Source: Heteronotia binoei
Lineage: Eukaryota
Reading direction: 5' to 3'
Length of the DNA stretch: 64,000 nt
Assembly: GCF_032191835.1 (NCBI RefSeq)
Contig: NC_083230.1
Location: 68,076,001 to 68,140,000, forward strand
Shown here: piece by piece, positions 1-63,590 of the stretch
Layout: the number at the start of each line of letters is the position of its first letter
How positions within the stretch are numbered: the stretch's first letter is position 1
The notes under the pieces: generated by a model
What the model was told of the DNA's origin: nothing
Seen by the model: only the letters and a program-made list of their open reading frames with translations
Databases searched by the model: none
Translations under genes and position numbers: made by a program

Positions 1-1527
1 TTCCTAATGTTTAGCCAAAAACTCTTTTGATTTAATTTCAACCCACTGGTTCTGTTCCAACCTTTTGGGGCAACAGTAAACAATTCTGCACCATCCTTTG
101 TATGACAGCCATTCAAGTACTTGAAGATGGTGATCATATCACCTTTTAGTCATCTCCTCTCCAGGCTAAAGATACCCAGTGTTATATGTGTACATATGTT
201 TTTATTGAATTATTGTATATATATATTATTTTTAATGTTTTTAATATTGAAGTGTTTTAATGATCACAAAATATTTTGAATAAATGAAACTCTAACCCTA
301 AGAAACAGTCCATTAATGTTTTTATAGAAATATTCATCCCTTTCCACCTGTCTCTGTCATTCAATTCATACCCCATTGTTTCCAGTGAGTAAAATGAACA
401 CTCATCTATCTTAATCTGTGTTGTCATTCAAGTAGAAACCGACACTTTGATGCTTCCTTTATCCATTGCAGAAGCAGTCATCTGCAGCAAAGCATATATC
501 TCTTGGGAGCTAGGCATTCCCATGCAAAAACAATGTCAATCAATTAGCTGGAAAGTAACTAGTGCAAGAGAAATGGGCTCCAGAGCAGAGGACCACCTGG
601 ACAATGAATGAAACAAACTCAAGTAGAAACAATGTATAGGATCCAAGCCAGCCTTTTTACTGTCAAGGTTACGAATTTCTATTGTTTGGGCACAGACTTT
701 TTCTGTTGCTGCTCTACTGCTTCCTGGATGTGGGGAAACAGGCACCTGGCCTGGTGACCTTCTGGTGGCTGTCAAAGAGGGCTCTTTAAAATAGCTTATA
801 GGTCATCATGAAGGCTGTAGGTGTGTGCTCTGGTTTATCTATCTTAATTGGGTGTTTAAATAAAGTGTTATAATGATTTGAATAGATAAGTTTTGTGTTT
901 TTCATTGTTACCTTCCTTGGACATAGGATTAGCAGCCACTAGTTGATCTCAAGAATCAAGACTACAGAGATCAGTTCCCCTGGAGAAACCAGCTGATCAC
1001 ATCCCTGCTGAGCTTCTTCCACTCCTAAACTCCACCTTCCCCAGGCTTTGCCCCAAATCTCCAAATCCAGAGTTGTCAACCATACTTGGGCCCTCACTAT
1101 ATCAGGAGAAAGGTGGGGTATATAAATTAAGTAAACCAATCAACAAATGTTCTGGCTCTAAAGCCTGCTTTCCATTGACATGATTCAGTAGTACAAGCAG
1201 ACAGGTTCTTTTCTATTGTGATTCCTTCAATCAGTGGTTCTGTCCCCAATATCACATTGACAGGTGTTTCACTAGCAGACATAGTGCAGCTGCCATAATT
1301 TTTAGGCTAAAGGTACTGATATTTTAAAAATGCATTGGGTTCTGATTAACTAAAAACTGGCCCAGTTTGTCAGTTCTCCTAATATCAACATGCTTATATG
1401 CTTCTGAGGTATTTTTAAAAGCTGCCTTTTTTTCCTTTTATGCCACCAAGTAGTGGTAAATGGAAACCAATAGATGAAGTTATTTAATTGAAAAAGGTTT
1501 TCACTGTTCTCTTAGGCTAAGACTTAC

Positions 1528-2413
1528 TGTTGATTCTGTTGTTATCAAGATGAAGATGCTCAAGGTGAATTCCAATAGCTGGGATTTTGGTGAGTTCATT
1601 GTTAGATAGCTGTAGGTCAAGAAGAGATGAAATATTAAAGATTTTAGCTGGTAGACCTTCATCAGTTAATTTATTGTTATTCAGCCGAAGGAAAAGCAGT
1701 TTGAGCATTGCATTAAAATAGTTCTCCGGTATTGCTTCAATAGAGTTATTATCCAAAAACAGCTGCATTACATTAGCTGGTAGGATTGGTGGCATTCTAG
1801 TGAGTGAGTTTTGAGCAATATTGAGTTGTATGAGATTGTGTAATCCTTGAAAGGTAACATCTGAAAGGGTACTGTCCAAAAGTTTGTTGTGATGCAGATC
1901 TAGCATAGTGAGATTTTCCAGATTGCTGAAGACTTCTCCTGGGATTGTGGTGATTTTGTTTCGTGCCAAACGTAGCTGCTCCAAACTTGCTGGCAATGGA
2001 GCTGGCACCTCTTCTAGCTCATTGTCTTCAAGAAATAAGTAAAGGAGACTCTTCAAGCTGGCAAATACACCCTTTTCAATTCCGTTGCTAGTGAGTTTGT
2101 TGTTGTTCAGATTTATCCATTTTAGTTGAGTGGCATTTGCAAAGGATTCCCCTTTAATTGTTTCAAAGAGGTTGTTTTGAAGATAAAGATACCAAATTCT
2201 TGCTGGGATGATGGGTATTTCTTTAAGTTCCCTACTATCACAGTATAAAGCACTTGGGAAGCCAGGTGGACAGAAACATGGTTGTGGACACTCAAAGCTG
2301 TAGAATGACCAATCATATAAGGAGGTCTGGTCATATATTGGTCTGATATTTCGAGTCCATACAATATTGGCCAGGAAGAGTACCAAAAGGCAGGAACAGA
2401 GTTTTACATTCAT
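1528..2413 (-). CDS. KERA: Keratocan, main coding exon (signal peptide, N-terminal Cys cluster, LRRs); final exon outside the window to the left
   Basis: Translation MNVKLCSCLL...CPQPCFCPPGFPSALYCDSRELKEIPIIPARIWYLYLQNN...LRLARNKI matches class II SLRP keratocan. Acceptor tttttcag|G (exon starts 2420), ATG at 2413, donor AACA|gtaagt at 1528/1527; 886 coding nt, phase 1. Lies next to lumican as in the known EPYC-KERA-LUM-DCN cluster. Confidence 0.95.
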
Positions 2414-3923
2414 AGTTTGCCTGAAAAAGAGAGGAATAGTGAATACTTTCTCCAGCATTCGTTTCTGAAAGGCATAAGGATTTCAATGAAACATCAATGA
2501 AATTTGACAAAAGCTGTCTTTATAATGGATTTAATAGTACCTGACATGGTATCACTGATTTTTTTTTTATTAAAAAAGAGTGATCATTGTTTAAAGGCAA
2601 TGGGATCTACCCCCAAATATATTTCTTACTGTGACTGTATCATATATTGTTTATTAGATAAGCCAAGTCTACTTTCAGTCCAAGAAAGCTAAAAATATAA
2701 TCAATGCTTTCTGTCACTTTTAAACTGGTCTTTGACCTTGCAATGTAAAATATTCCATATGCAAAATAATGTCACCTGAAACAGAGGAGGCATGCGTTAG
2801 AATAGGACTGACATGATTTCATATACTGACAGCTGTCCAGCTGTTTTGACTCTGCTTTAAAACTCACATGTTCTTTTTGTACTCCTAAATGAGAAGGGCA
2901 TCTGGATCAGATTTCCTAGGCCCAGATCTCATTGCACACAAAGGGAAAGATCAAATAATATTTTAACAGCTGTTTAATGGTCATATTCTTAGAATTCTGG
3001 GAAAATTAGTTTGAATAATCTATGTACTTTTTCAATAACCCCCTTGTGCCTTAAATTACTTGCTGTCTTAAAAAAAAATGTAAATTGCTTATAAAGCAAA
3101 TTCTGCCCAGACCTAAACTTTACTGCTTAACACATACTCAAGTTTCTTTGTCCAAAACCATTCTTAATTCTCACACTAAAATTTTCCACTGAGTGTATAA
3201 TTATTTTTAAAAATTCCTATAAATAATGGGTGACCATTACAATAAAAATATATCTCATTTCCTGATGTTTGCCTTAATTAATAAACTAATGAGTTGTTGC
3301 CTTGTTTCCTTTTGAGAAAAACATTTAGCCAGCAGCACAAATTGATAGAGATTGATTTTGCCCCTTAAAAGCATTAAAATTGATAGAGAATCACAGAGAC
3401 AGATCACTAATACAAAAGAAAACCTAATATCTGGTATTAACAAAATAGTATTTTAGTAGTTATAGTAGCTATTATTGTAGCTATTTCAGTAGTACAGTAG
3501 CTATTGCTGTGAAACATCTTGTGCCAAAATTTTGAAGTCCTTAGAAACTGCTGTTGGATAACAGTCCACAAAATTGCTGAATGTTTGAAATAATGAAAAA
3601 AAGAAAGGAATAAAAAACAAGTGTCGACAAAAAGATTATCATTGACTTAAACATTAGCTTTCTATTACATATGTACATTTTCAAAATTGTTATAATGAGT
3701 AATTAAAATGAGTTTACCTTGTTCAGGTTAAGTTCTGGTTTCTGGAGGCTGCTAGAAATAGTTTGAGTATAAAATATCTCCTTTCAACATTTTTTGCAGT
3801 CTGAATTTCTGGAAATTAGCATCATAGAACCTAAAATATATAGTAGTAGCCCTGAGACACACTACCAAAGACACCCAATATTCCATTGTTTCTAATTTGA
3901 CAATGCTACAGAATCAAGCTTAC

Positions 3924-5302: not shown

Positions 5303-6094
5303 CAATTGCAATAAAAAAGGCCGATGCCATGCTGGGAATTATTAGGAAGGGAATTGAAAACAAATCAGCCAGTATCATAATTCCCCGGGTGGCCCGTTCC
5401 CAGTGGGAGGTCTTGAAAAGGCAGCTCCAAGCTGGCTGTCACAGGTGACTGCCGGCTGCAGTGCCAAAGGCTGATCACACTCCAGATCATTAAGAGGACA
5501 GGTCTTTAACAACTGAGTATCAGTCCTTAACAGGGACAGCTTGCCCACTAGGCCAACTCCATGCTGGGAATTATTAGGAAGGGAACTGAAAACAAATCAG
5601 CCAGTATCATAATTCCCCTGTGTAAATCGATGGTGCTGTCTCATTTGGAGTACTGTGTGCAGTTCTGGTCACCACACCTCAAAAAGGATATTATAGCATT
5701 GGAGAAAGTCCAGAAAAGGGAAACTAGAATGATTAAAGGGCTGGAACACTTTCCCTATGAAGAAAGGTTGAAACGCTTGGGACTCTTTAGCTTGGAGAAA
5801 CGTCGACTGCGGGGTGACATGACAGAAGTTTACAAGGTTATGCATGGGATGGAGAAAGTAGAGAAAGAAGTCCTTTTCTCCCTTTCTCACAATACAAGAA
5901 CTCGTGAGCATTCAATGAAATTGCTGAGCAGTCAGGTTAAAACGGATAAAAGGAAGTACTTCTTCACCCAAAGGGTGATTAACGTGTGGAATTCACTGCC
6001 ACAGGAGGTGGTGGCGGCTATAAGCATAGCCAGCTTTAAGAGGGGATTGGATAAAAATATGGAGCAGAGGTCCATCAGTGGCTATTAGCCACAG

Positions 6095-6125
<31 letters not shown>

Positions 6126-6238
6126 ATAAACATACATACACACACACACACATACATATATTGGCCACTGTGTGACCAATGTTGTTGGACTGGATGGGCC
6201 ACTGGCCTGATCCAACATGGCTTCTCTTATGTTCTTAT
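5303..6238 (+). mobile_element. CR1 LINE, 5'-truncated 3' fragment (ORF2 C-terminus and 3'UTR)
   Basis: ORF 5561-6088 (HLEYCVQFWSPHLKKDIIALEKVQKR...LFSLEKRRLRGD) is the CR1 RT C-terminus; ends in ...ctgatccaacatggcttctcttatgttcttat like the other copies. Confidence 0.92.
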
Positions 6239-7582
6239 CTGCTTTGCTAGCCATGAACAGATCTCTCTCTGTCTCTCTCTCTTTTTTTTTGGAGGGGGGG
6301 TGTTTAGTTTGATAATTCATTGATCTCTTTGTGGATATTCAGTGGGTTGTTTCACTGGGATCGGCCCCTCCCAGCCAAGCCTGCACGCCAGTGTTTAGGC
6401 TGGGGGCCGTGATTGCCACCCGGAAGGAGGAGGTGGCTGGACAACGTCCCAGGCATCTGGGTCTTCATTCTGGGCGCGGCGTCGGGACTATATAAAGCCC
6501 CGGGCCCGCCCAGAACCATGCAGTTGCTTTTGGCTCTCTGCCCTCCCACCCGCCCTTTTTGGCAGTACAGGTTTTTACCGGTCGCCTTATTAGGGGCCAA
6601 GTAGGAATTTTTTCATCTTCACAGAATTGGCCCATGTGGAGTTGTTTTTTGCCTACCTTGTACTGTCTTGTAGCTTTAGAGAGTTTAGCATGAGTTTGTT
6701 TGGTCGCAGGCAGGAGGATGTATTGGCCACAGGGTTTTCAGGGGAGCACCTATGGCTCAGCACCAGGTGTGCGGGTGGTCTGTATGAACTGCAAATGGGC
6801 TGTACGGCTCAGTGCGGGGAATGCAGATCACGAAGAAGCCTCACCTGGGCGGATCTTTTCCATGGGGGATTGATGCTGGCCCAGGTGGAGGATGGCTTTG
6901 GGCCTGGCCGCTCAGCACCAGCCAGAATACATGGGCTTGTGCTAGGGTTCCCAACCCTCCCGCCCTAGCGAGGGACCCCAGGTTTTCCAGCCTCTTCCCC
7001 CGCTCCCCAAAGAAACGGAAGTGGGGGGAGAAACGGCGCGAAGGAGCGTGGCAAGCTGCCCCTTTTCTGCTTCACCATGGCTGCTCCTCCAAGATGGGCT
7101 CAGGCTGGGCCCATCTCGGAAGAGCAGCTGGGATGGGGCGGAAAGGGGGCGGTGGGGGGGCGGGCCGGGGGGGCGGGCCAGGAGCGTGGCGGGGGGTGGG
7201 GTGGGAGAGAGAGTGTGCCGCTCTAGGCTGTGCTGGGAAGTGCCTCCTCCTCTTCCTACTTGGTCTCCTGGGCAACCCAAGTCAGACGCCTTAGCTGCCC
7301 GCCCACCTTCTGGCGCGGCCTCCTGGGGTGGGAGGGGAGAAAAAGCGAGAGGGCCGCTCCAGGCCACGCGCGGAAGTGCCTCCCCTTCCTGCTCGGTCTC
7401 CGGGGCAATGCCAAGCAGAGGCCTTCGCTACCCGCTCGCTCGCCCGCCACCTGGCAGCTGCTGGCTTGGCCTCCTGGGGGGTGGGAGCGCGGCTCCCAGG
7501 GAGGGCGGGTGGGGGTGGCTCCTTGCCTGCCCCCCGGGTCCACTTGGGGTGGAGGGGAGCCGCTGGTGTGCGGGCTGCTGCC

Positions 7583-10500
7583 ATGGCTGGTCCTGCCGCC
7601 GCCACCATCCGGATCGGGGACCAGCTCATCTTGGAGGAAGACTATGGCTTTCCCCCCTCGCCTCCTTCACGCTCCCACACCCCCCCCGCCCCCCCCACCC
7701 GCGACAAGGTCATCAACCGAGAAGCTCTCTCACCCATGCCTCTGAGAACTATATTAAGAACTGTGCTTAAAACGGTCCCTATACTAGAAAACAGCACCTG
7801 CACTTTAAGAGCCGCCACGAAGCACCAAAGACGCCTAAAACCTGGACATTCGATTTTGAATACTTATACCAACCACCAGCACTTTAAGAACTAAACCCTA
7901 CCTCACCTCCAACTTTTATCCCCACTGCCCACGGACTATAGATCACCACTAGAATTATTATTAAGAATGAATTAGATTTAAATTGATTAGAAACTGGATT
8001 TATTAAATTGATTAGAAACTGGATTTATTATGTATTTATGTTTTTAAATGCATATAGAATTAATTAATTCAATTGATTATTTATTCACGTTAGCACTTTA
8101 GATTAGTTAGGAATTGGACTTTATTATAGTGCTAAGTAGGAATTATTATTTACTAATCAAATTGGAAGATTATGGTGAACTAGATAACTGGGAACAGAGG
8201 ACGAAGGTGGGCAGGAGATCTATGCTGTGTATCAATACCAACTAGTCAGTGGAATACTATCATTGGGAGAATAGGTCGGGATGTCCAGTCAGGGGATCCC
8301 AGTGCTCCTGGGGAGGGGAAGATATGACGGTGGGAATAGACGGAGATGTGAGAGAAGGAGGCTGAGACAAAACAGTGCTCGGCCCCCTTCTAGTCTACTT
8401 CCCATCCCGACGGTGACAAGTAGTGGGACCAAGAGAAATTGCCCGCGTCCGACACTGGTGTTATGCAACGCCAGGTCTATAAATAATAAGACCGAAACCA
8501 TTAGGGACTTCCTGCTTCGACAGGACGCAGACCTGGCTTGCGTGACCGAGACCTGGGTACAAGAGGGGGAGACGACGGCACTCTCCCAGATGACCCCCCC
8601 AGGTTACTCGGTCTTTCACCAGTCCCGGATTAGCGGGCGGGGGGGGCGGGGGGGCGGTACTCATACGGGAGGGTTACTCCTTCCGGGCTCTCCCGGCCCC
8701 AAAGATCGACGGTATTGAGTGTGTTGGCCTTGCGTGGGATGTCGGGGAGAGGTTGGCGATCCGCCTAACGCACCGGCCAGCGCCTTACCATCCCTGATGG
8801 AGGCGGTGTCCGGCTGGGCGCTGGAGTACCCAGGGCTTCTGGTCCTGGGCGACTTCAATGTCCATGCCGATGACGCGGCCTCTACTCAGGCGATGGACCT
8901 AGTGTCTTCCATGACGACACTGGGACTCTCCCAATTTGTTACGACTCCCACGCATCAGGCTGGGCACACATTAGATCTGATCTTTGCGACCGGGATTCAA
9001 GTGAACGAAATCGCAACGGAGACGATACCATGGTCGGATCACTTAGCCCTCAAGGCTCGTATGGAGACGCTACCACAACCCTGTAAGGGCGGAGAGCCTA
9101 TTTGGCTCGCCCGCGGAGCCTGATGGACCCGGAACGGTTCCAAATGGCTCTTCGGGATCCTTGGCCCCCTGGCGATTCCCTTGATGCCCTGGTTGATGCC
9201 TGGCAAGATCGGCTATCCGGGGCAATCAACGAGATCGCACCTTGACGTCCTCTGCGCCCTCGTTCAAGGCCGGCTCCTTGGTATACCTTGGAGCTACGCC
9301 GGTTGAAACAAGGACTCCGACGACTAGAGAGGCAGTGGCGGCGCACTCGTGACGAAGCGGCGAGAACATCCTATAGAACGTTGATGAGGTCTTATGAGGT
9401 GGCAGTCAAGGCCGCGAAGAAGAAGTACTTCGCGGCCAAGATTGCGTCTGCAAATTCGCGCCCAGCACAATTGTTTAAAATAATCGGGCAGTTAACCACA
9501 CTGCCCCAAGGCAGACCAAACGTTAGAGAATTGGAAATAGGCTGTGAGGCTTTTGCGAAATTTTTTGCAGACAAAATCACGTCGCTCCGCCAGGACCTGC
9601 CCATCACCTTGGATACAGTGTGTGAGCCCGAGGCCCCGTGTCTGTCTTCGGATTTAATCCTGGATCACTTCAGCCCGCTCAGCCTGGAGGAAGTTGACGG
9701 AATTCTCTCCTCTGCACGCCCTACAACTTGTGATTTGGACCCATGCCCCTCCTGGCTAATTAAATCCTGCCTGAGGGAGCTTGAATGTCCTTTACGGGAC
9801 ATCATAAATAGATCCCTCTCGGAGGGGCGCTTTCCATCATCTCTAAAAGAGGCTTTGGTCCGTCCCCTCTTGAAAAAAAGTACAGCGGATCCGGCCGAAT
9901 TGGCAAACTACCGACCGGTCTCTAATTTACCATTTTTAGGTAAAATTATAGAGAGGGCAGTGGCGTCACAGTTGCAGAGCTTTCTGGATGACGCTTCCAT
10001 CCTAGACCCTTGCCAGTCCGGCTTTCGTCCGGGTTACGGGACGGAGACAGTACTGGTCGCCCTGGTAGATGATCTCCAACGGCACCTGGATCGGGGCGGT
10101 GTGGCGGTGCTGATGTTGTTGGACCTGTCGGCTGCGTTCGACACGGTCGACCATCGGCTACTGACCCGCCGCCTCGCCGATGAGGGGGTCTGCCTTACAA
10201 TGGCTTGCCTCCTTCCTCGAGGATCGGGGACAAAGGGTGGCAATTGGGGGAGCTGTCCCAGAGGCGCACACTGGATTGTGGAGTGCCTCAGGGGGCAGTT
10301 CTCTCACCAATGCTATTTAATATCTACATGCGCCCCCTTGCCCAGATTGCCAGGAGACATGGACTTGGGTGCCATCAATATGCAGATAACACCCAACTCT
10401 ATCTGCTAATGGACGGCCGGCCTGACTGCGTCCCAGAGAATTTAGACCGGGCCCTGCAGGATTTGGCAACCTGGTTGAGGAAGAGCGGGCTGAAACTGAA

Positions 10501-11469
10501 TCCAGCGAAGACAGAAGTCCTTTGTCTGGGTCGGGGCGCTCGGGGAGGGGAAATACCTCTCCCGGTCTTTGACGGGGCGCCATTGAAAGTGGCGCACCAA
10601 GTTAAGAGCCTGGGAGTTTTACTGGAGCCTGCATTATCAATGGAGGCCCAGATTGCAGCCACTGCCAAGTCAGCCTTTTTCCATCTAAGGCGGGCAAAGC
10701 AGTTGGCTCCCTTCCTAGAGCGCCAAGATCTGGCAATGGTGCTTCATGCAACAGTCACCTCGAGACTGGATTACTGTAATGCCCTCTACATGGGGCTGCC
10801 TCTGTGCCGAACCCGGAAGCTGCAGCTGGTGCAGAACGCAGCGGCTAGACTGTTGCTGGGACTCCCTAAATGGGAGCACATACAGCCTGGGCTGCGCGAA
10901 CTGCACTGGCTGCCAGTTACATACCGGGTTCGTTACAAAGTGCTGGTCATTACCTTTAAAGCCCTATATGGTCGAGGACCTGTCTACCTTAGGGACCGTC
11001 TCTCCTCATATGAACCCCAGAGAGCACTGAGGTCAGCCGGGAAAAACCTGCTGACTATCCCCGGACCGAGAGAGGTGAAGCTGCAAAGCACCCGTAACCG
11101 GGCCTTCTCCTCTATAGCCCCGAGCCTATGGAACCAACTTCCAGAGGAAATGCGGGCCCTGCGGGACCTAGAACAGTTCCGCAGGGCCTGCAAGACCTTC
11201 CTCTTCAGACTGGCCTTCCCTGATGAAAATGGAAATTGCGAAGGAAACCGCCATCAGAAAAAGTAAACATAGCACTAGCACTTTTAAAAATTAACTAATT
11301 TAATTTTAAAGCTTAACCAGATTTTAACTAAATGCTGATAATGTTTAATGTAGTTTTATTTACTTGTATAATTTAACTCTGAACCATGTTGTTAGCCGCC
11401 CTGAGCCTGCTCCGGCGGGGAGGGCGGGATACAAATAAAATTTGTTGTTGTTGTTGTAGCAAGCAAGGT
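7583..11469 (+). pseudogene. CEP164: Captured fragment of the CEP164 first coding exon (7583-7646 + 11457-11467, then GT donor), interrupted by an L2 LINE
   Basis: gccATGG start encodes MAGPAAATIRIGDQLILEEDY, matching the CEP164 N-terminus as I recall it (human [28 protein letters not shown]). After the L2 tail the sequence resumes t-agc-aag-caa-g|gt (S-[E>K]-Q then donor). Confidence 0.75.
7647..11457 (+). mobile_element. L2-clade LINE, long young copy; APE-RT ORF2 broken by ~3 frameshifts
   Basis: Endonuclease motifs LCNARS, DLACVTETW, LVLGDFNVH, GHTLDLIF, SDH (8281-9123). RT motifs NYRPVSNLPFLGKIIE, QSGFRPGYGTET, LLDLSAAFDTVDH, GVPQGAVLSPMLFNIY, YADNTQ (9288-11266). 3' end gttagccgccctgag...gggcgggatacaaataaaa + (GTT)n. 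Confidence 0.95.
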
Positions 11470-11544
11470 ATCCCCTCCTCGCCCTGCCTGGGGGGTGGGG
11501 GTCACCCGAGGGGGGTCCAGGCCCTCCTCCTCCTCCTCCCGCTG

Positions 11545-12074
11545 TAAGGTTGCCAATCCCCAGGTGGGGGCAGGGGATCCCCTGGTTTGGAGGCCCTCCC
11601 CCCACTTCAGGGTTGTCAGAAACCGGGGGGAGGGGAGGGGAATGTCTGCTGGGAACTTTATTATTCCCTATGGAGATGTATTCCCATAGGAAATAATGGA
11701 GAATTGATCCATGGGTATCTGCGGCTCGGGGGGGGGGCTGTTTTTTGAGGTAGAGGCACCAAATGTTCAGTACAGCATCTAGTGCCTCTCCCCAAAATAC
11801 CCCCCAAGTTTCAAAACGATTGGACCAGGGGGTCCAATTCTATGAGCCCCAAAAGAAGGTGCCCCTATCCTTCATTACTTCCTATGGGAGGAAGGAATTG
11901 AAAAGGTGTGCTGTCCCTTTAAATGTGATGGCCAGAACTCCCTTTGGAGTTCATGATGCTTGTCACAGCCTTGATCTTGGCTCCGCCCCAAAGTCTCCTG
12001 GCTCCACCCCCAAAGTCTCCTGGCTCCACCCCCAAAGTCCCCAGATATTTCTTAAATTGGACTTGGCAACCCTA
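11545..12074. mobile_element. hAT MITE (family B) forming the right end of the composite unit
   Basis: TAAGGTTGCCAATCCCC...TTGGCAACCCTA; closely similar to 62471-63285. Its own left flank (tcccgctg) does not match its right flank (gcttgtgc). Confidence 0.88.
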
Positions 12075-12374
12075 GCTTGTGCTGGGGGCAGGGTGGCTCG
12101 CCCTCTCAGGACAAGGCAGGGTCAGGGGGTTGACCCCAGGGCTTGTCCTGCTAGGCCATACCCCTGCCAGTTATAAGTTTGCTCAAGTTTGTTCTAATAA
12201 AGCGGCCCGGTTTTTATACCCAAAATACTGTGTCAGCCTCTTCATTCCAACTGGGGGGGCAATACTCTTTACTAGTCATGTCCTACAGTTCAATTGGCTT
12301 TTTGTGCATGCACATTCTCACACAGCCTGATTCCCCGCTCCTCCGCGGCCGCCTGAGGCTGGAGGCCTGGGTGA

Positions 12375-12833
<459 letters not shown>

Positions 12834-12964
12834 TAGGAGATCAGTTCACCTGGAGAAAGTGGCTCTTCAGAAGTTGGGCACTATACTCCAATAAAGTCAA
12901 TGACAAAATAGTCCATGACACCCAGAACAGCCTCCTGAGATGGCATAAAATGAACTAGTGATTA

Positions 12965-13620
12965 TGCATCATTAAATCTTTTGTCCTCCCTAAATTTATT
13001 TTTCTTTTCCAGACCATTCAACTAGGGATCACATTTAAACACTTACAGACTTGGCAGAAAACATGGCTGGAATTTTATTCTGGTCTTCCAAAAAACACAG
13101 GGTTGGCTGCTGCACACTGCAAAGACACTCAAAATGGGGGGGGGGGGGTAGCTTTCCCAATATTCAGCAATATTACTTGGCTATTCAACTTTCAAACATT
13201 GTTAAAATGTTAGTAAATTATTCCACTTCTGATTGGATGCAATTGGAATACACTCAACCATTTGACATCCAAGAAGTAATATGGCAAACCCCAGCAAATT
13301 GCCCTAAACAACTTCTCAACAATCCTTTTTTAACTTTAATATTATCTTGCTGCCTCCCATATCTTTGGGGCTCTGGCAGATCTGAGGATTGTTCTGAATT
13401 CTGTTAGAGGTTGCTGTATAATAAAAGTGAGGTTTATGCAGAAGCATAGGTGAGAAATCTGGAAATATTGCATTCATGGGATTGTATTGTATATTGTATT
13501 CAATTTTTTGTTTTTAAATTCAACTTCAACAGTAACAAGTTCTTGAATGTAAGTTCCTGAAGTCATAATTTTAGATGTTTTCCAAAATTTGAAGGATGAG
13601 TTTTTGAAGCCAGGTAGAAA
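12965..13620 (+). mobile_element. Degraded L1/Tx1-type LINE ORF2 fragment
   Basis: Frames give LPKFIFLFQT and GG.FPNIQQYYLAIQL...W..LE, typical of the post-RT region of L1-clade ORF2. Confidence 0.6.
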
Positions 13621-21264: not shown

Positions 21265-21576
21265 CTCCCCAATGGTGGAATCAATTACCAGCGGAGGTTC
21301 GAGCCCTGCGGGACTATAATCAGTTCCACAGGGCCTGTAAAACTGTCCTTTTTCAAATGGCCTACAAGATTGAATCCTGAAGTGACACCTAGCCATCTGA
21401 TATATACTGTCTTGTATATAGCACCTTAACTGTTGTGGTTTTAATTAAATTTTTTAAATGTATTTTATTGTATAATGTATTTATTGTAATCATGGCATTT
21501 TCCATGTCTGTAAGCCGCCCTGAGCCTGCCTCGGCGGGGAGGGCGGGATATAAATAAAAAATTATTATTATTATTA
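21265..21576 (+). mobile_element. L2 3' fragment
   Basis: ggaatcaattaccagcggaggttcgagccctgcgggac ... gtaagccgccctgagcctgcctcggcggggagggcgggatataaat + (ATT)n. Confidence 0.85.
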
Positions 21577-35189: not shown

Positions 35190-35829
35190 TAAAAATAATT
35201 ATTAATGACAAGGGAGCAACAGTGCATCCCCTGTTCACTGAGAGTGGTCATCAAGGCATTAAAAAAGAGAGAGTGTAAAGGAGTGGGTACACTAGGCATA
35301 AGAGCTGTATTTGATCAGATGAAACATGGATAACAGTGAGGTGTCAAAAATCTCCATCATCCTCCCTCACCAGCCTATTGAATGATGGCAGAGAATGGGG
35401 GCCTGGACTGGCTGGTCTCCCCCTACAGGAGGCGACCTGGCCTCATTTTTTAACATTATCTAAAATATTATAGAACAGGACAAGTTGAGCATACCACTTT
35501 GTATGTCAGATGCATGTGTGTTTGCACTTCACTAAAATATTTCACAATTTCAAACCAGGTGCTTTATGTTTCTGAACTAAACCGATTAAAGACAGGAAAG
35601 GAGACTGAGGTTTGTTATTTACAAGGCTGTTGTGGGGCTTCACTATATCTCCTCATCTATATGAGGAGATCAGCATCCTGAAAAAAATGTTGTGAGTTGT
35701 TATTTCCTGCAGTATTGTTAAGCAGTCAAGAAGATAATTCTGTAGACTGAACAACAGGTTATTTCCTAGGTTGTTATGGTAATTTTATCATCTCTCCCTT
35801 TTCCTCAAAATATGGCAAATATTACTCAC

Positions 35830-36730
35830 TGTTAATCTGATTGACTTGGAGGTAGTAATTTTCAAGGTGTTCATTAACTGTTGGAATGCTCTTCAGTTGA
35901 TTGTAGGAGAGATCCAGCTCAACAAGGGTGGAAATATTGAAAGCATTGCCTGGTATTCCAGAATCTGTCAACTTATTGTGAGAGAGACGTAAAAACTGCA
36001 GTGTTTTAAAACCTTGGAAATATTCATCAGGAATGTTGGTAATCTCATTGTTGTCAAAATATAGCATCAGTATATTAGGGGGTAGTCCCAGAGGCAATTT
36101 AGAAAGTTTATTGTAACTGAGATCAAGATACAAAAGTGAATCCAAGCCTTTAAAAACCCCAGAAAGTGAATCTTCTGTCAGTTGGTTGTGCTGTAGGTGA
36201 ACAACAGTTAGATTCACTAATCCTTCTAATGTATTGGGGTTGATTTTTGAAATCTTGTTGTGAGTGAGTTGTAGGTCATCCATGGTATTGGGAAGTGGCC
36301 CAACAACCTCAGTTAAGTTGTTGTAGTTAATATGCAGTTTTTTCAAATTCTTTAATTTGGCGAACACTTTACCTTTAATTTTTGAATTTTCCAAATGGTT
36401 ATTATCTAGGATTAGCCACTCCAGGTCTGTTACATTATTAAAAGCATTATCTTCGATTCCTTCAATCATATTATTTCGCACATATAGGTATTTAATTCCA
36501 GAAGGAATGATTGGAAGACTTTTCAGTTTAAGGTTATCACAATACATGGCTGATGGATAAGTTACAGGGCAATTACATTCTGGTGCACAGAGTGCTGTTG
36601 ATGGCCCATACATGGGATGAGCATAACCATAATCTGGGTCTGGAGGATAATATCCAGCATGATCATAATCATATTGACAGAAGATGCCAGTGATCAAGAA
36701 AAGGAAGAAAGGAAGAGAATTCAGATGCAT
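35830..36730 (-). CDS. LUM: Lumican main coding exon
   Basis: MHLNSLPFFLFL...CAPECNCPVTYPSAMYCDNLKLKSLPIIPSGIKYLYVRNN...FKTLQFLRLSHN. Acceptor ccttcaacag|A (exon starts 36750), donor AACA|gtgagt at 35830/35829. Confidence 0.97.
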
Positions 36731-42890: not shown

Positions 42891-42904
42891 CTGTCCTGGG
42901 ACCC

Positions 42905-43262
42905 GGGCTTTCTCTGTAGTGGCTCCACACCTATGGAACCAGCTTCTGGAAGAAATGCGGGCCCTGCGGGATTTCGAACAGTTCCGCAGGGCCTGCAAGA
43001 CCATCCTTTTTAGGATGGCCTACACCGATTAAAGAGAGAGAGAGAGACTGCTAAGAAAAAAATTATCATCTGTTGTAATAGCACCAGGATGTCAATTTTA
43101 TTAATTTTAATTTTAGAATTTTAATTAAATTGTTAAATTAGTTATTGTTTCGAATATCATTGTATAATTTAATGTATTGATTTAATGTTGTTAGCCGCCC
43201 TGAGCCTGCTTCGGCGGGGAGGGCGGGATACAAATAAAATGATGATGATGATGATGATGATG
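42905..43262 (+). mobile_element. L2 3' fragment with (GAT)n tail
   Basis: cacctatggaaccagcttctggaagaaatgcgggccctgcggg ... gttagccgccctgagcctgcttcggcggggagggcgggatacaaat. Confidence 0.85.
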
Positions 43263-50015: not shown

Positions 50016-51392
50016 TTCAATGTATATCCCGCCCTTCCCACCGAAGCGGCTCAGGGTGGCTTACAACACATAAGAACTAACATAGGTTTTGGATTTAAAA
50101 TACAGCAAATTACACCGTTAAAACAGTAAAATGGTAAAACAAGCGATCTATCAGAATACTACACTGCAATCTTCTATAGAGTTTCCAATGCCAGTTAGTT
50201 ATAGGCCAGCCAGAAAAGGGCTGTCTTACAGGCCCTGTGGAACTGGCCAAGGTCCCGCAGGGCCCTCACCTCCTCCGGCAGCTGGTTCCACCAGCAAGGG
50301 GCCATTACCGAGAAGGCCCTGTCCCTGGTGGATTTCAGATGGGCCTCTTTTGGCCCGGAGATATCAAGCAGATTTTGAGAGCCCAATCTCAGCACTCCTT
50401 GGGGAACATGTGGGGAGAGACGGTCCCTAAGGTAGGCAGGTCCTAGGCCATATAGAGCTTTAAAGGTAATAACCAGCACCTTGTACCGGACTCGGTATAT
50501 TATTGGCAGCCAATGCAGATCCCGAAGCCCTGGCCGAATGTGCTCCCATCTTGGAAGCCCTAATAACAGCCGGGCAGCAGCATTCTGCACTAACTGCAAC
50601 TTCCGGGTTCGGCACAGGGGCAGCCCCATGTAGAGGGCATTACAGTAATCCAACCTTGAGGTGACCGTTGCATGAATCACCATTGCTAGATCGTCATGCT
50701 CCAGGAAAGGAGCCAACTGCCTCGCCCACCTAAGATGGAAGAATGCAGACTTAGCAGTGGCTGCTACTTGAGCCTCCATTGTTAGGGAAGGCTCCAATAG
50801 TACCCCCAAACTCTTGACCTTGTGTGCCACTGTCAGCGACACACCATCAAAAACTGGCAGGGGGATTTCCCTTCCCGGGCCATGACGGCCCAAGCAAAGG
50901 ACCTCTGTCTTTGCCGGATTTAGCCTCAGTCCACTCAGCTTTAGCCACCTAGCCATGGCCTGTAGTGCCCGGTCCAAATTTTCTGGGACACAGGTAGGCC
51001 AACTGTCCATAGTAGATGACAACCCAACCCATACCTCCGGGCAATCTGGGCAAGGGGGCGCATATAGATGTTAAATAACATCGGGGAGAGCACCGCCCCT
51101 CGAGGCACTCCACAGTCAAGCATGTGTCTCCAGGACAGTTCACCCCCAATCGCCACCCTTTGTCCCCAACCTGCAAGGAAGGAGGAAAGCCATCGTAAGG
51201 CCAACCCCTGAATCCCTGCGTCGGCGAGGCGGCAGGTCAGTAACCGATGGTCAACCGTATCGAACGCTGCCAATTGGTCCAACAGCATCAGCACCGCCAA
51301 GCCGCCTCAATCCAGATGCCATTGAAGGTCATCTACCAGGGCAACCAGCACCGTCTCTGTCCCGTGGCCCGGGCAAAAGCCGGACTGATGAG
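50016..51392 (-). mobile_element. L2 LINE, 5'-truncated
   Basis: ORFs 51300-50941 and 51022-50195 are L2 RT (AAFDTVDH, GVPRGAVLSPMLFNIY, TSRLDYCNALYMGLP); same family as 7647-11457. Confidence 0.92.
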
Positions 51393-54844: not shown

Positions 54845-56712
54845 TGATCTGAGTCAGGTTGAGATGATGAGAGAGCAGGTCCTACAACTGATGGATAAAT
54901 TAAAAACTGACAAATCACTAGACTCAAATGGCATTCACCCAGAGCTCTGAAAGAACTCAAGTGTGAACTTGTGGACCTTTTGACAAAAATATCCAATCTA
55001 TTTTATTAAAATCTGCCCCCCCCCCATTCCCAAGCTAATGTAACCCTTATCTTTTAAAATGGTTGAGAGGTGATCTGGGAAATTACAATCTAACATTGAT
55101 ACCAGGTAAGTTGGTGGGATCCTTTATTAAACATAGAATTAGTAAGCACATTGATGAACGAAAGTTATTGAGGAAAATCAGGATGGATTCTGTAAGGGAA
55201 GATCTTGTCTCACTAAACTGTTACAGTTCTTTGAGGAGGTAAACAAGCATATGGACAAGGGTGACCCAATATATGTTGTTACCTAGACTACAGAAAGCTT
55301 TTAATACAATTCCTCATCAAAGGCTCCTAAGTAAACTCAGTAGTCATGGGATAAGAAGACAAGTCTTTTTGTGGATTAAAACTGATTAATTAACAGGAAA
55401 CAGTGAGTAAAAATTGGCAATTTTCACAGTGGAAGGGAGTAGGCAGTGAGGTACTGTGGGGCTTGGTATTAAGTTCAGTGCTTTTTTATCTTGTTCGTTA
55501 ATGATTTGAAGTTGGGAGTAAGCAATGAATTGGCTAAATTTGCAGATTACACTAAATTGTTCAGGGTAGTGAGAACCAGGGAGGATTATGAGGTGCTCAA
55601 GAGGGATCTGTCAATGCTAGGTGAGTGAGCATCAATGTGGCAAATGAGGTTCAGCATGGGCAAGTGCAAAGTAATGCACACTGGAGCAAAAAATCTGAAG
55701 AGGAGGGGGCGATTGAATTTATACACTGCCCTTCACTCAGAGTCTCAGAGCAATTTACAATCTCCTTTCCCTTCCCCTCCTCACAACAGACACCCTGTGA
55801 GGTAGGTGGGGCTGAGAGAGCTCTTTTGAGAATGGGTCTTTTGAGAACTGTGGCTGACCCAAGGTCACTCAGCAGGTGTCCAAACTGGCAGAGACTGACC
55901 AGGAGAGAGATCATGGAGTTGTGGTAGATAACTCACTGAGAATGTCAACTCAGTATGAGAAGGAATTTTTTAAAAAGGCAAATGCTATGCTGGGGATTAT
56001 TAGGAAGGAAATTGAAAACAAATCAACCAGTATCATAATGCCCCAGTACACGTCTTGTCATCGCACCTCAAAAAAGATATATAGCATTGAGAAAAGGGCA
56101 GAAGAGCTAAAAATATTAAGGGGATGGAACACTTGCCCTATGAAGAAAGGTTAAAGAGTTTAGGGCTCTTTAGCTTGGAGAAACAACAACTGAGGGGTGA
56201 CATGGAATACAGATGCTAGGGAAAGAAGTCCTTTTCTTCTATTCTCACAATATAAGAACTCATAGGCACCCAATAAAATTAATGAGCCTTTGGTTTAGAA
56301 CAGATAAAACTAAGTAGTTCTTTACCCTAAGAGTATTTAACATGGTAGCTACATGCATAGACAGCTTCAAGAGCGGATTAGATAAACATATGGAACAGAG
56401 ATCCACCAGTGGCTATCAACCACAAGCTGCCCTGAGCCCATTTTTGGAGTAGGGCATGGTATAAATTAAATAAATAAAATTAAATGAAGAAGATGATGAT
56501 ATGAAATGAAATGAAATGAAGGTTTAGATGGAACACTATGTCCGGGGCAGTGATGCTCTGTCTTCTTGATGCTTGGGGGCAACAGTGGGAAGACTTCTGG
56601 AGTCTGGCCCCACTGTTGGAACACCTGATGGCACCTAGTTTTTGGCCACTGTGTGACACGGAGTGTTGGACTGAATGGGCCATTGGTCTGATCCAACATG
56701 GCTTCTCTTACA
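54845..56712 (+). mobile_element. Older CR1 (RT to 3'UTR), interrupted by a SINE (~55695-55880, minus) and an L2 tail (~56425-56525)
   Basis: Degenerate DKLKTDKS..GIHP.LKELK, QKAFNTIPH, NAMLGIIRKEIENKS; CR1 3'UTR ends ggcttctctta at ~56710. Confidence 0.85.
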
Positions 56713-57098
56713 TTCTCCAGGGGAACTGATCTCTGTTTGGAGATGAGTTGTAAGTATGGGCCATCTGCAGTTATATCACAAAACTAGCAACCCATACCCA
56801 CTGACTTTGGGAAGACTTTTTGATTATATATAAACATGGATCTTGGTTGCCTGAACTACTCTGTTACCTGAAACTGCATACATACTAGGTATGAAAAAGA
56901 AAGGTATCATTTGTATCCGCTGACAAGCAGGTAAAGTAGATAGCTGAGCCCAACCCCAATGACTCTTCTCTCAAAGGCCAAAACAACCCTGAAAAGGGGT
57001 CTCCCCTCCGCTTTTTACTGGCAAATACCAAGCCTGTTGTGGCTACCAAGCAACAGTGACTGAGGGCAACCATTTCTTTAAACTACAGGTGCTCCTAT

Positions 57099-62470: not shown

Positions 62471-63285
62471 TAGGGTTGCCAATCCCCAGGTGGGGGCAGG
62501 GGATTCCCCGGTTTAGAGACCCTCCTCCTGCTTCAGGGTTGTCAGAAAGCAGGGGGAGGGGAGGGAAATGTCTGTTGGGAACTCTATTATTCCCTATGGA
62601 GATTTATTCCCATAGAAAAACATGGGGCGTTTTCGCACTGACCTTAATCAGCAGCGACGCCCCTCTTCACCGCACAGGATCGGCGCGGATTTCGCACTAA
62701 TTGCTGCGGAGCACCCGGAAGAGCCGGAAAGTCCCACGGCTTTTGCGGCACAAACGGAAACCGCCAAAAACCAGTTTCCATTTGCGCTGCAAAAGCCGCA
62801 GGACTTTCCGGCTCTTCTGGGTGCTCCGCGGCAATTAGTGCGAAATCCGCGCCGATCCTGCGCGGTGAAGAGGGGCGTCGCTGCTGATTAAGGTCAGTGC
62901 AAAAACGCCCATGGAGAATTGATCTGCGGGTATCTTGGGCTCTGGGGGTCTGTTTTTTGGGGTAGAGGCACCAAATTTTCAGTATAGCATCTAGTGTCTC
63001 TCCCCAAAATACCCCCTACATTTCAAAAAGATTGAACCAGGGGGTCCAATTTTATGAGCCCAAAAAGAAGGTGCCCCTATCCTTCATTTTTTCCTATGGA
63101 AGGAATTGAAAAGGTGTGCCGTCCCTTTAAATGTGATGGCCAGAACTCCCTTTGGAGTTCAATTATGCTTGTCACAGCCTTGATCTTGGCTCCACCCCTA
63201 ATGTCTCCTGGCTCCACACCCAAAGTCTCCAGGCTCCACCCCCAAAGTCCCCAGATATTTTTTTTAATTGGACTTGTCAACTCTA
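62471..63285. mobile_element. hAT MITE family B, intact with TSD, hosting a palindromic insert
   Basis: tagggttgcc...tgtcaactcta; perfect TSD gtggatat (62463-62470, 63286-63293). Confidence 0.9.
62625..62910. mobile_element. Palindromic PIF/Harbinger-like MITE (286 bp)
   Basis: Near-perfect inverted arms of >110 bp starting gggcgtttt; 3-bp TSD atg; empty site visible in the 11545 copy (aaataatggagaa). Confidence 0.82.
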
Positions 63286-63299
63286 GTGGATATCTGATA

Positions 63300-63590
63300 T
63301 AGGGTTGCCAGGTCTCCTGCTATGGTGGGAGACCTCTTGCTGCAACCCTTTTTATCTACCATTGTTCTGAGGGGTGGTGGGAGAAGGGTTTTTTTTTTTT
63401 TTAAATGATGGTGTTGCATACAGTGTGACATCACTTCTGGGGAAAACCTAGTAGTTTTCTGGCTGGAAATGACATGGCATTGCATGACATCATCCCCCCC
63501 ACCCCCCAGTTTCTTCCTGCCACTGGAAGGGGGATGGGGAGTGCCAGCTGAAGTTCCTTCACCAGAAATGAGCAACAGGCAACACCGTCT
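63300..63590. mobile_element. hAT MITE remnant
   Basis: tagggttgccaggtctcc start, tgacatcacttc internal motif; right end degenerate. Confidence 0.55.

What the first reader, a model, noticed from the sequence alone, without database searches (positions are those of the whole stretch)
6943..12074. Pack-type hAT composite transposon that moved a genomic piece of CEP164 to the KERA upstream region
Seen: the unit starts TAGGGTTCCCAA, ends TTGGCAACCCTA and is flanked by identical gcttgtgc 8-mers. The two ends come from different MITE families. The right-end MITE (11545-12074) lacks its own TSD, unlike the intact sister copy at 62471-63285, so the last transposition used the outer ends and carried the DNA between them. 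Inside are ~550 bp of CpG-rich DNA, a Kozak ATG encoding MAGPAAATIRIGDQLILEEDY and, after the L2, agc-aag-caa-g|gtatcc. Knowledge (from memory): this is the CEP164 N-terminus, whose exon ends SEQ-E|gt. Inference: keeping the donor and ~75 bp of GC-rich intron means capture at the DNA level, not retroposition. Without the L2 the unit is ~1.3 kb. Pack elements are well known in plants but rarely documented in amniotes.
Basis: partly seen in the sequence, partly recalled or inferred. Interest (0 to 1): 0.88.

Follow-up and report, generated by a model that had tools for sequence, protein, structure and literature searches.

The report
hAT composite carrying a CEP164 exon piece
A cut-and-paste (hAT-type) transposon without its own enzyme gene carried a dead copy of the start of the centriole gene CEP164 into the DNA upstream of the keratocan gene of a gecko. 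It is a clean reptile example of a known but rarely documented way of moving gene pieces.

Summary
A 5,132-bp unit (6943-12074) has hAT-like termini and a perfect 8-bp target duplication, gcttgtgc, that occurs nowhere else in the window. Its right part is a complete 530-bp MITE without a duplication of its own. Its left ~114 bp is a related 5'-type end.

Between the ends lie 526 bp of GC-rich DNA and an ATG (7583) opening 21 codons. Among 177,635 solved-structure sequences these codons hit only the CEP164 N-terminus (E 0.013). After a later LINE insertion come the exon end, a GT donor and 77 bp that read like intron.

A related gecko's contig lacks the whole block 6356-12264, so the unit is nested in a lineage-specific insertion. 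New here: a second such end, 250 bp away in pre-insertion coordinates, abuts a fragment of the first coding exon of TMEM245.

The reading as a Pack-type or composite hAT element is largely supported. Comparison with the native CEP164 locus, copy counts and a base-exact empty site could not be run. The "promoter" label is untested.

This scan had already flagged CEP164-bearing units on four other pieces of this genome, and CHCHD3 and CCDC50 analogues. Pack-TIR elements are known in animals, so this is a new member of a known kind.

The parts
6935..6942 (.). Left copy of the 8-bp target-site duplication, gcttgtgc
   Evidence: Only two copies of this 8-mer exist in the window, at the two outer termini.
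6943..7056 (+). A-type 5' end module; terminal inverted repeat TAGGGTTCCCAA at 6943-6954
   Evidence: 87-89% identical to a second copy at 12697-12801 on the minus strand, up to a shared TGGCAAGC, after which the two diverge. 61% identical (z about 6) to B-family 5' ends.
7057..7582 (+). GC-rich, CpG-rich non-coding cargo upstream of the ATG; holds a diverged tandem duplication (7193-7302 / 7325-7435) with GGAAGTG cores
   Evidence: GC 0.71, CpG o/e 0.52. Internal repeat at 76%. Unique in the window. Its origin from CEP164 upstream DNA is inferred, not tested.
7583..7646 (+). 5' part of a CEP164-like first coding exon: ATG in a good Kozak context, 21 codons, plus 1 base
   Evidence: phmmer against 177,635 PDB sequences gave only CEP164 chains (7nwj/7o06/7o0s, 7o3b), E 0.013, aligned to the protein's N-terminus.
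7647..11457 (+). Later LINE insertion that splits the captured exon; about 17 bases of exon appear lost
   Evidence: Exo_endo_phos and RVT_1 domains in ORFs 8281-8718, 9288-10409 and 10205-11266. Conserved 3' end to about 11440, then a (TTG)n tail. The family is abundant in related animals.
11458..11467 (+). End of the captured exon (agc aag caa g = S K Q + 1 base)
   Evidence: Read directly. The match to the CEP164 exon end ...SEQ-E|gt rests on memory of the human sequence.
11468..11544 (+). Intron-like GC-rich DNA starting with a GT donor
   Evidence: Read directly. In frame it runs to a stop. That it does not resemble the residues following the exon in CEP164 rests on memory of the human sequence.
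11545..12074 (+). Complete B-family hAT MITE that supplies the 3' terminus (TIRs at 11545-11556 and 12063-12074)
   Evidence: 89% identical over its full length to 62471-63285. No duplication of its own. In related animals, hundreds of contigs end at 11548 and at 12074 with unlike flanks (table 7).
12075..12082 (.). Right copy of the target-site duplication, gcttgtgc
6356..6934 (.). Context: left part of the LTR-like element in which the unit is nested (TATA-like box near 6490)
   Evidence: In contig L001 of a related gecko, the sequences matching 6301-6355 and 12265-12332 lie 4 bases apart.
12083..12264 (.). Context: right part of the same LTR-like element (AATAAA near 12198)
12333..12696 (+). 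Neighbouring unit, cargo: fragment of the first coding exon of TMEM245, with an internal deletion and a 3' truncation
   Evidence: phmmer against 1.84 billion representatives, E 1.6e-14. Hits are named TMEM245 or carry the AI-2E_transport domain. Local tblastn placed 12462-12683 at E 1e-19 to 2e-21. Homology with L001 breaks exactly at 12332/12333.
12697..12801 (-). Neighbouring unit, second A-type 5' end (terminus at 12801)
   Evidence: No partner terminus or duplication was found.

Best explanation
6943-12074 is one insertion of a non-autonomous, hAT-type composite ('Pack-hAT') element.

Shown: a transposase supplied in trans would have cut at an A-type 5' end (6943) and at the 3' end of a complete B-family MITE (12074), skipping that MITE's own 5' end. 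The whole piece was pasted into an LTR-like element about 4.5 kb upstream of the main keratocan exon, duplicating gcttgtgc.

The cargo is a DNA-level copy of the 5' region of CEP164. It comprises GC-rich upstream DNA, the first coding exon, its GT donor and 77 bp of intron-like DNA. A LINE later landed in the captured exon with a loss of about 17 bases, so the copy cannot encode the protein start.

Inferred: the unit is a member of a multicopy family, so its donor was probably another copy and not the native gene. The first capture arose in one of two ways. Either two MITEs flanking the CEP164 5' region were mobilised together (macrotransposition), or CEP164 DNA was copied into an element during repair of an excision gap. 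I rate the two routes about equally likely.
For: - The perfect 8-bp duplication is unique in the window.
- The termini are 11/12 complementary.
- The B MITE is complete but lacks its own duplication, while its sister copy has one.
- The A end is homologous to B 5' ends only, so the unit has one 5'-type and one 3'-type outer end.
- B-family copies end at 11548 and 12074 with varied flanks in related animals.
- The 21 codons hit only CEP164 in the PDB.
- The only protein domains in the unit are those of the LINE.
- The block is absent from a related gecko's contig.
- A second A-type end carries a TMEM245 exon fragment.
- Unchecked notes of this scan report the same kind of unit elsewhere in the genome.
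Against: - The CEP164 match is short (17 aligned residues, E 0.013).
- The non-coding cargo was never compared with a native CEP164 locus.
- No other copy of the unit was seen by me. Multicopy status rests on unchecked notes.
- No transposase source was identified.
- The related-species contig lacks the host LTR-like element too, so a single gcttgtgc 'empty site' was not observed.
- A second A end, inverted, at 12801 has a flank that matches 5 of 8 (p about 0.03).
Confidence: 0.8

Rival explanations
1. Two independent insertions (an A-type element and a B MITE) happen to bracket a pre-existing duplicated CEP164 fragment. The identical 8-mers are chance.
For: The region is dense in transposons. 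Several hAT-like ends lie within 6 kb.
Against: An 8/8 match at fixed positions has p about 1.5e-5. Neither element has a duplication of its own. A related gecko lacks the whole block and shows no intermediate state.
Confidence: 0.03
2. The mobile unit was larger: 6943-12801, bounded by the two inverted A-type ends. The inner gcttgtgc would then be coincidental.
For: The arms are 89% complementary over 90 nt. The flanks gcttgtgc and gctggaga agree at 5 of 8 positions, p about 0.03.
Against: Ancestral sequence shared with the related gecko (12265-12332) lies between the two units, so they sit at separate insertion sites. Both arms are 5'-type ends. The 8/8 match would remain unexplained.
Confidence: 0.03
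3. The CEP164 piece is a processed retrocopy or a remnant of a segmental duplication that merely lies between transposons.
For: The exon is short. A LINE sits inside it.
Against: The sequence after ...SKQ starts with GT and runs to a stop; from memory it does not read like the next CEP164 residues. More than 500 bp of GC-rich non-coding DNA precedes the ATG. Termini and duplication bound the piece exactly.
Confidence: 0.05
4. This is the animal's real CEP164 first coding exon.
For: Good Kozak ATG and a conserved N-terminal peptide.
Against: It lies between keratocan and a lumican-like gene. It is split by a LINE with loss of bases. It is bounded by transposon ends with a duplication. It is absent at this locus in a related gecko.
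Confidence: 0.01

Closest known systems
Pack-TIR / Pack-hAT elements of animals (Tan et al. 2021, Nat Commun 12:4280, PMC8277862)
   Same: Non-autonomous element with terminal inverted repeats and a target duplication, whose interior derives from a host gene. In that survey hAT was the commonest superfamily (208 of 370). Multicopy cases with distinct duplications exist in a frog and in the alligator.
   Different: - That paper's text names no lizard or other squamate.
- Only 4 multicopy cases were found there, whereas scan notes suggest several copies of this unit.
- Here the right end is a whole MITE and the left end comes from a related subfamily.
- The parental locus was not verified here.
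Ac/Ds macrotransposons and alternative transposition in maize (e.g. PMC9910405, PMC4270019; listed, titles and abstracts only)
   Different: In maize this is shown genetically. Here it is inferred from one structure. The A module may not be a complete element, and the source arrangement at CEP164 was not seen.
Cargo-laden hobo/hAT elements of Anolis carolinensis (Novick et al., Genome Biol Evol 3:1, PMC3014272)
   Same: Squamate hAT elements, autonomous and not, gain extraneous 'filler' DNA at a high rate and amplify it.
   Different: The filler described there is mostly other transposons. In a term search of that paper (I did not read it in full) 'exon' and 'host gene' do not occur.
Pack-MULEs of rice (knowledge from memory)
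   Same: Amplified elements carrying gene fragments, with a bias to GC-rich 5' ends of genes.
   Different: Different superfamily (Mutator, 9-bp duplication), in plants. The 5' bias in this gecko rests on a handful of cases.

Membership tests
hAT superfamily, non-autonomous element | 8-bp target-site duplication | tested here: met
   gcttgtgc on both sides of the unit, gtggatat on both sides of the sister MITE.
hAT superfamily, non-autonomous element | Short terminal inverted repeats of the YAGRG... type | tested here: met
   TAGGGTTCCCAA and TAGGGTTGCCAA (reverse complement), 11/12. That this motif type is typical of hAT is from memory.
hAT superfamily, non-autonomous element | Mobilised by a hAT transposase with matching ends | not testable with these tools
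   No transposase ORF lies in the window near the unit. The genome could not be searched.
Pack-TIR (gene-fragment-carrying TIR element) | Interior derived from a host gene, no transposase | tested here: met
   The CEP164 N-terminus is the only PDB match, E 0.013. The only domains found are LINE endonuclease and reverse transcriptase. The match is short.
Pack-TIR (gene-fragment-carrying TIR element) | A parental copy exists elsewhere, with similarity ending at the cargo borders | not testable with these tools
   No run holding this locus was listed. The reads laid gave no depth over 6699-7096. Protein searches with cargo ORFs found nothing.
Pack-TIR (gene-fragment-carrying TIR element) | Transposition of the loaded element (copies with different duplications) | not tested
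   Only unchecked notes of this scan report other CEP164-bearing units, one of 1,339 bp, close to the 1,321 bp of this unit without the LINE.
Macrotransposon / composite of two elements | Two complete elements in direct orientation flank the cargo | tested here: inconclusive
   The B MITE is complete. The A part is a 114-bp module ending in TGGCAAGC, which resembles a 3' end only weakly. Two A copies diverge at the same point into different host DNA.

The most novel reading that the evidence does not exclude
This gecko lineage had a hAT system that repeatedly picked up GC-rich 5' pieces of host genes: CEP164 and TMEM245 here, CHCHD3 and CCDC50 in other notes. It amplified at least one of them to dozens or more copies. 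That would be an animal counterpart of rice Pack-MULEs, scattering CpG-rich start-of-gene modules that could seed new first exons or promoters.
Probability: 0.35. Interest if true: 0.72.

Novelty: new member of a known kind. Interest (0 to 1): 0.5.

Why it matters
Movement of gene pieces by cut-and-paste transposons is well documented in plants but sparse in amniotes. The one broad animal survey found only four multicopy cases. This window gives a structurally clean gecko example. It also holds, a few hundred bases away, a second unit with the same kind of end and a different gene's first coding exon. If genome-wide counts confirm many copies and a bias to gene starts, the genome would be a good system for two questions: how such capture happens, and whether the scattered CpG-rich pieces act as promoters or alternative first exons.

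Tried and rejected
- My first PDB queries were one base out of frame and gave nothing relevant. The in-frame query is.
- The look-up of sequencing runs on 6400-7700 listed no run.
- Runs found through the lumican-like exon were laid on 6500-12450. They covered only repeats (LINE, B MITE, parts of the LTR-like element). Depth was zero over 6699-7096 and no joint spanned the LINE. So they gave no parental locus, no L2-less copy and no empty site.
- The search for homologous proteins with ORFs spanning the cargo found nothing.
- PDB chain sequences cannot be fetched, so the exon end ...SEQ-E was not checked by a tool.
- A by-sequence look-up of the scan's findings was blank and means nothing.
- No partner terminus or duplication was found for the TMEM245/A2 unit. 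The only hit was a 1-mismatch 8-mer at 12358, which is chance level.
- The 118 bases of L001 beyond the break have no significant match right of 12802, so that unit's right border is not confirmed by the relative.
- Rfam found nothing in 5500-13500. The bacterial promoter scan is irrelevant here.
- The LINE clade ('L2') was not determined.
Full report
**1. What is there**

The termini are TAGGGTTCCCAA (6943-6954) and TTGGCAACCCTA (12063-12074), 11 of 12 complementary. The 8-mer gcttgtgc directly flanks both termini and occurs nowhere else in the 64 kb. I tested every pairing of hAT-like plus and minus termini. Only two pairs have 8/8 flanks: 6943/12074, and the sister MITE 62471/63285 with gtggatat. 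The chance of an 8/8 match at fixed positions is about 1.5e-5.

**2. The ends**

The right 530 bp (11545-12074) is a complete MITE of a family I call B.
- It aligns end to end at 89% with 62471-63285. That copy also holds a nested fold-back insert of about 285 bp.
- Its own 5' terminus, TAAGGTTGCCAA at 11545, has no matching flank (2 of 8).
- In Logan contigs of four runs from related animals, hundreds of contigs stop matching at 11548 and at 12074 and continue into unlike sequence (table 7). These are therefore real family termini in a high-copy family.

The left module (A) is 114 bp, 6943-7056.
- A second copy lies inverted at 12697-12801. It is 87-89% identical, with one 9-bp indel.
- Both copies end in TGGCAAGC and then diverge completely.
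- A is 61% identical (z about 6 against shuffles) to the 5' ends of B copies. It shows no significant similarity to their 3' ends.

The unit therefore has one 5'-type and one 3'-type outer end, as a hAT transposase would need. That last requirement is established knowledge for Ac-like elements, from memory. The two families are related subfamilies, not unrelated ones.

**3. The cargo**

- 7057-7582 is unique in the window. GC is 0.71 and CpG observed/expected is 0.52.
- It contains a diverged tandem duplication of about 110 bp with GGAAGTG cores.
- An ATG at 7583 in a good Kozak context opens 21 codons.
- phmmer of these 21 residues against 177,635 distinct PDB sequences returned two sequences only. 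Both are CEP164 (7nwj/7o06/7o0s and the TTBK2-CEP164 fusion 7o3b). They align at the protein's N-terminus (AGRPLRIGDQLVLEEDY), E 0.013.
- The position of the disease change Q11P in that peptide agrees with the literature (bioRxiv 10.1101/2022.03.21.485080).
- At 7647 a LINE begins, with endonuclease and reverse-transcriptase domains. Its conserved 3' end runs to about 11440 and a TTG repeat follows to 11457.
- After the LINE come agc aag caa g | gtatcc... and 77 bp of GC-rich DNA that runs in frame to a stop.
- From memory, human CEP164 continues ...EEDY-DETYIP-SEQ-E at an exon end. On that reading about 17 bases were lost when the LINE inserted, and 11468-11544 is the start of the intron.
- The unit holds no transposase. 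Without the LINE it is 1,321 bp.

A caution on the word "promoter". The mouse gene has a non-coding exon 1 before the ATG exon. The 526 bp upstream may therefore be intron, promoter or both. This was not testable here.

**4. Where it sits**

- The ORF at 1517-2458 (minus strand) is keratocan. The best named hits are gecko keratocans at 90-91%, and a Logan ORF hits at 94%.
- 35822-36730 (minus strand) is a second small leucine-rich proteoglycan. It reads like lumican from memory.
- The unit lies about 4.5 kb upstream of the main keratocan exon, on the opposite strand.

The 4.2-kb contig carrying the 94% ORF (L001) matches the window at 85% over 3.9 kb.
- In that contig the sequences matching 6301-6355 and 12265-12332 lie 4 bases apart.
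- The relative therefore lacks the whole block 6356-12264.
- That block is a roughly 770-bp LTR-like element (TATA-like box near 6490, AATAAA near 12198) with the composite nested inside it.
- This fits a lineage-specific insertion and shows no intermediate state with one terminus only.
- Because the host element is also missing, the single gcttgtgc site itself was not seen.

**5. A second unit**

Homology with L001 breaks again exactly at 12332/12333. From there to the second A end lies GC-rich DNA (GC 0.76, CpG o/e 0.69).
- Its plus-strand ORF hits 16 proteins in a library of 1.84 billion, best E 1.6e-14 at 65% identity.
- The hits are named TMEM245 or carry its AI-2E_transport domain.
- Local tblastn places TMEM245 residues about 51-126 at 12462-12683 (E 1e-19 to 2e-21). 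A weak N-terminal piece lies in another frame, implying an internal deletion of about 48 codons.
- Homology stops about 25 codons before the natural end of that exon, 13 bases from the A module.
- No partner terminus or duplication was found.

Two A-type ends, at separate insertion sites about 250 bp apart once the composite is removed, each abut a different host gene's first coding exon.

**6. How it most likely works**

Shown:
- The unit has proper outer ends and a perfect duplication.
- It has an inner complete MITE that was skipped.
- It has a host-gene interior.
- It was later hit by a LINE.

Inferred:
- A trans-acting hAT transposase cut at 6943 and 12074 and moved the piece as DNA.
- The copy is dead as a coding unit.
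- Its origin is open between two routes. One is co-mobilisation of two MITEs that flanked the CEP164 5' region, as with maize Ac/Ds macrotransposons (papers listed). The other is copying of host DNA into an element during repair, as proposed for many animal Pack-TIRs (PMC8277862).
- The complete B MITE favours the first route. Two things favour the second: the A/cargo junction lies at the same A position in two units, and in one of them it falls in mid-exon.

**7. What earlier notes of this scan add (unchecked)**

Four other notes report CEP164 first-exon pieces on other parts of this genome. One describes a 1,339-bp hAT composite in a KRAB-ZNF intron. Follow-ups describe analogous units with CHCHD3 and CCDC50. 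If these notes are right, this is a multicopy family and the donor here was another copy. One note calls the species Bynoe's gecko. I could confirm only that it is a gecko.

**8. Comparison with what is known**

- Tan et al. found 370 Pack-TIRs in 100 animal genomes, most of them hAT. Only four were multicopy: three in a frog and one in the alligator.
- Novick et al. described Anolis hAT elements loaded with filler DNA.
- This is therefore a new member of a known kind. It has a tidy structure and an informative neighbour, but it is not a new mechanism.

**9. Limits**

- The native CEP164 locus, other copies, the transposase source, expression and a base-exact empty site were all out of reach of the tools.
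- The reads tool returned only repeat coverage.

Noticed in passing
window 12333-12801: A second A-type hAT end (12697-12801, minus strand) directly abuts a decayed fragment of the first coding exon of TMEM245 (12462-12683, plus a weak N-terminal piece at 12389-12445). No partner end or target duplication is recognisable. The left border coincides with a break of homology to a related gecko's contig.
   Followed up: yes
window 6356-6934 and 12083-12264; L001 187-190: An LTR-like element of about 770 bp (TATA-like box near 6490, AATAAA near 12198) hosts the composite. It is absent from the related gecko contig L001. Its class and duplication were not resolved.
   Followed up: partly
window 62626-62910: A fold-back (long inverted-repeat) insert of about 285 bp is nested in the sister B MITE, flanked by catgg on both sides.
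   Followed up: no
window 63300-63349 and 12802-12860, 56710-56800: A tiny hAT-like element starts with TAGGGTTGCCAG just after the sister MITE. Related 'tctcctgctat...acaactgatctc' sequence lies right of the second A end and at about 56.7 kb, so several hAT MITE families share the terminal motif.
   Followed up: no
window 7193-7302 and 7325-7435: A diverged (76%) tandem duplication inside the CEP164-side cargo. Each copy has a GGAAGTG (ETS-like) core. Another note of this scan says such repeats can belong to a hAT family itself. Not resolved here.
   Followed up: no
window 1517-2458 (-) and 35822-36730 (-): Main coding exons of keratocan (confirmed by named gecko hits at 90-94%) and of a lumican-like proteoglycan (Pfam LRR domains; the name is from memory). 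They have the same orientation, about 33 kb apart.
   Followed up: partly
window 50203-51387, 42903-43240, 21276-21559: Further fragments of the same LINE group as the one in the captured exon (72-91% identical), and a CR1/SINE-like cluster at 5800-6240 with copies at 20.1, 24.0, 49.5 and 56.2 kb.
   Followed up: no
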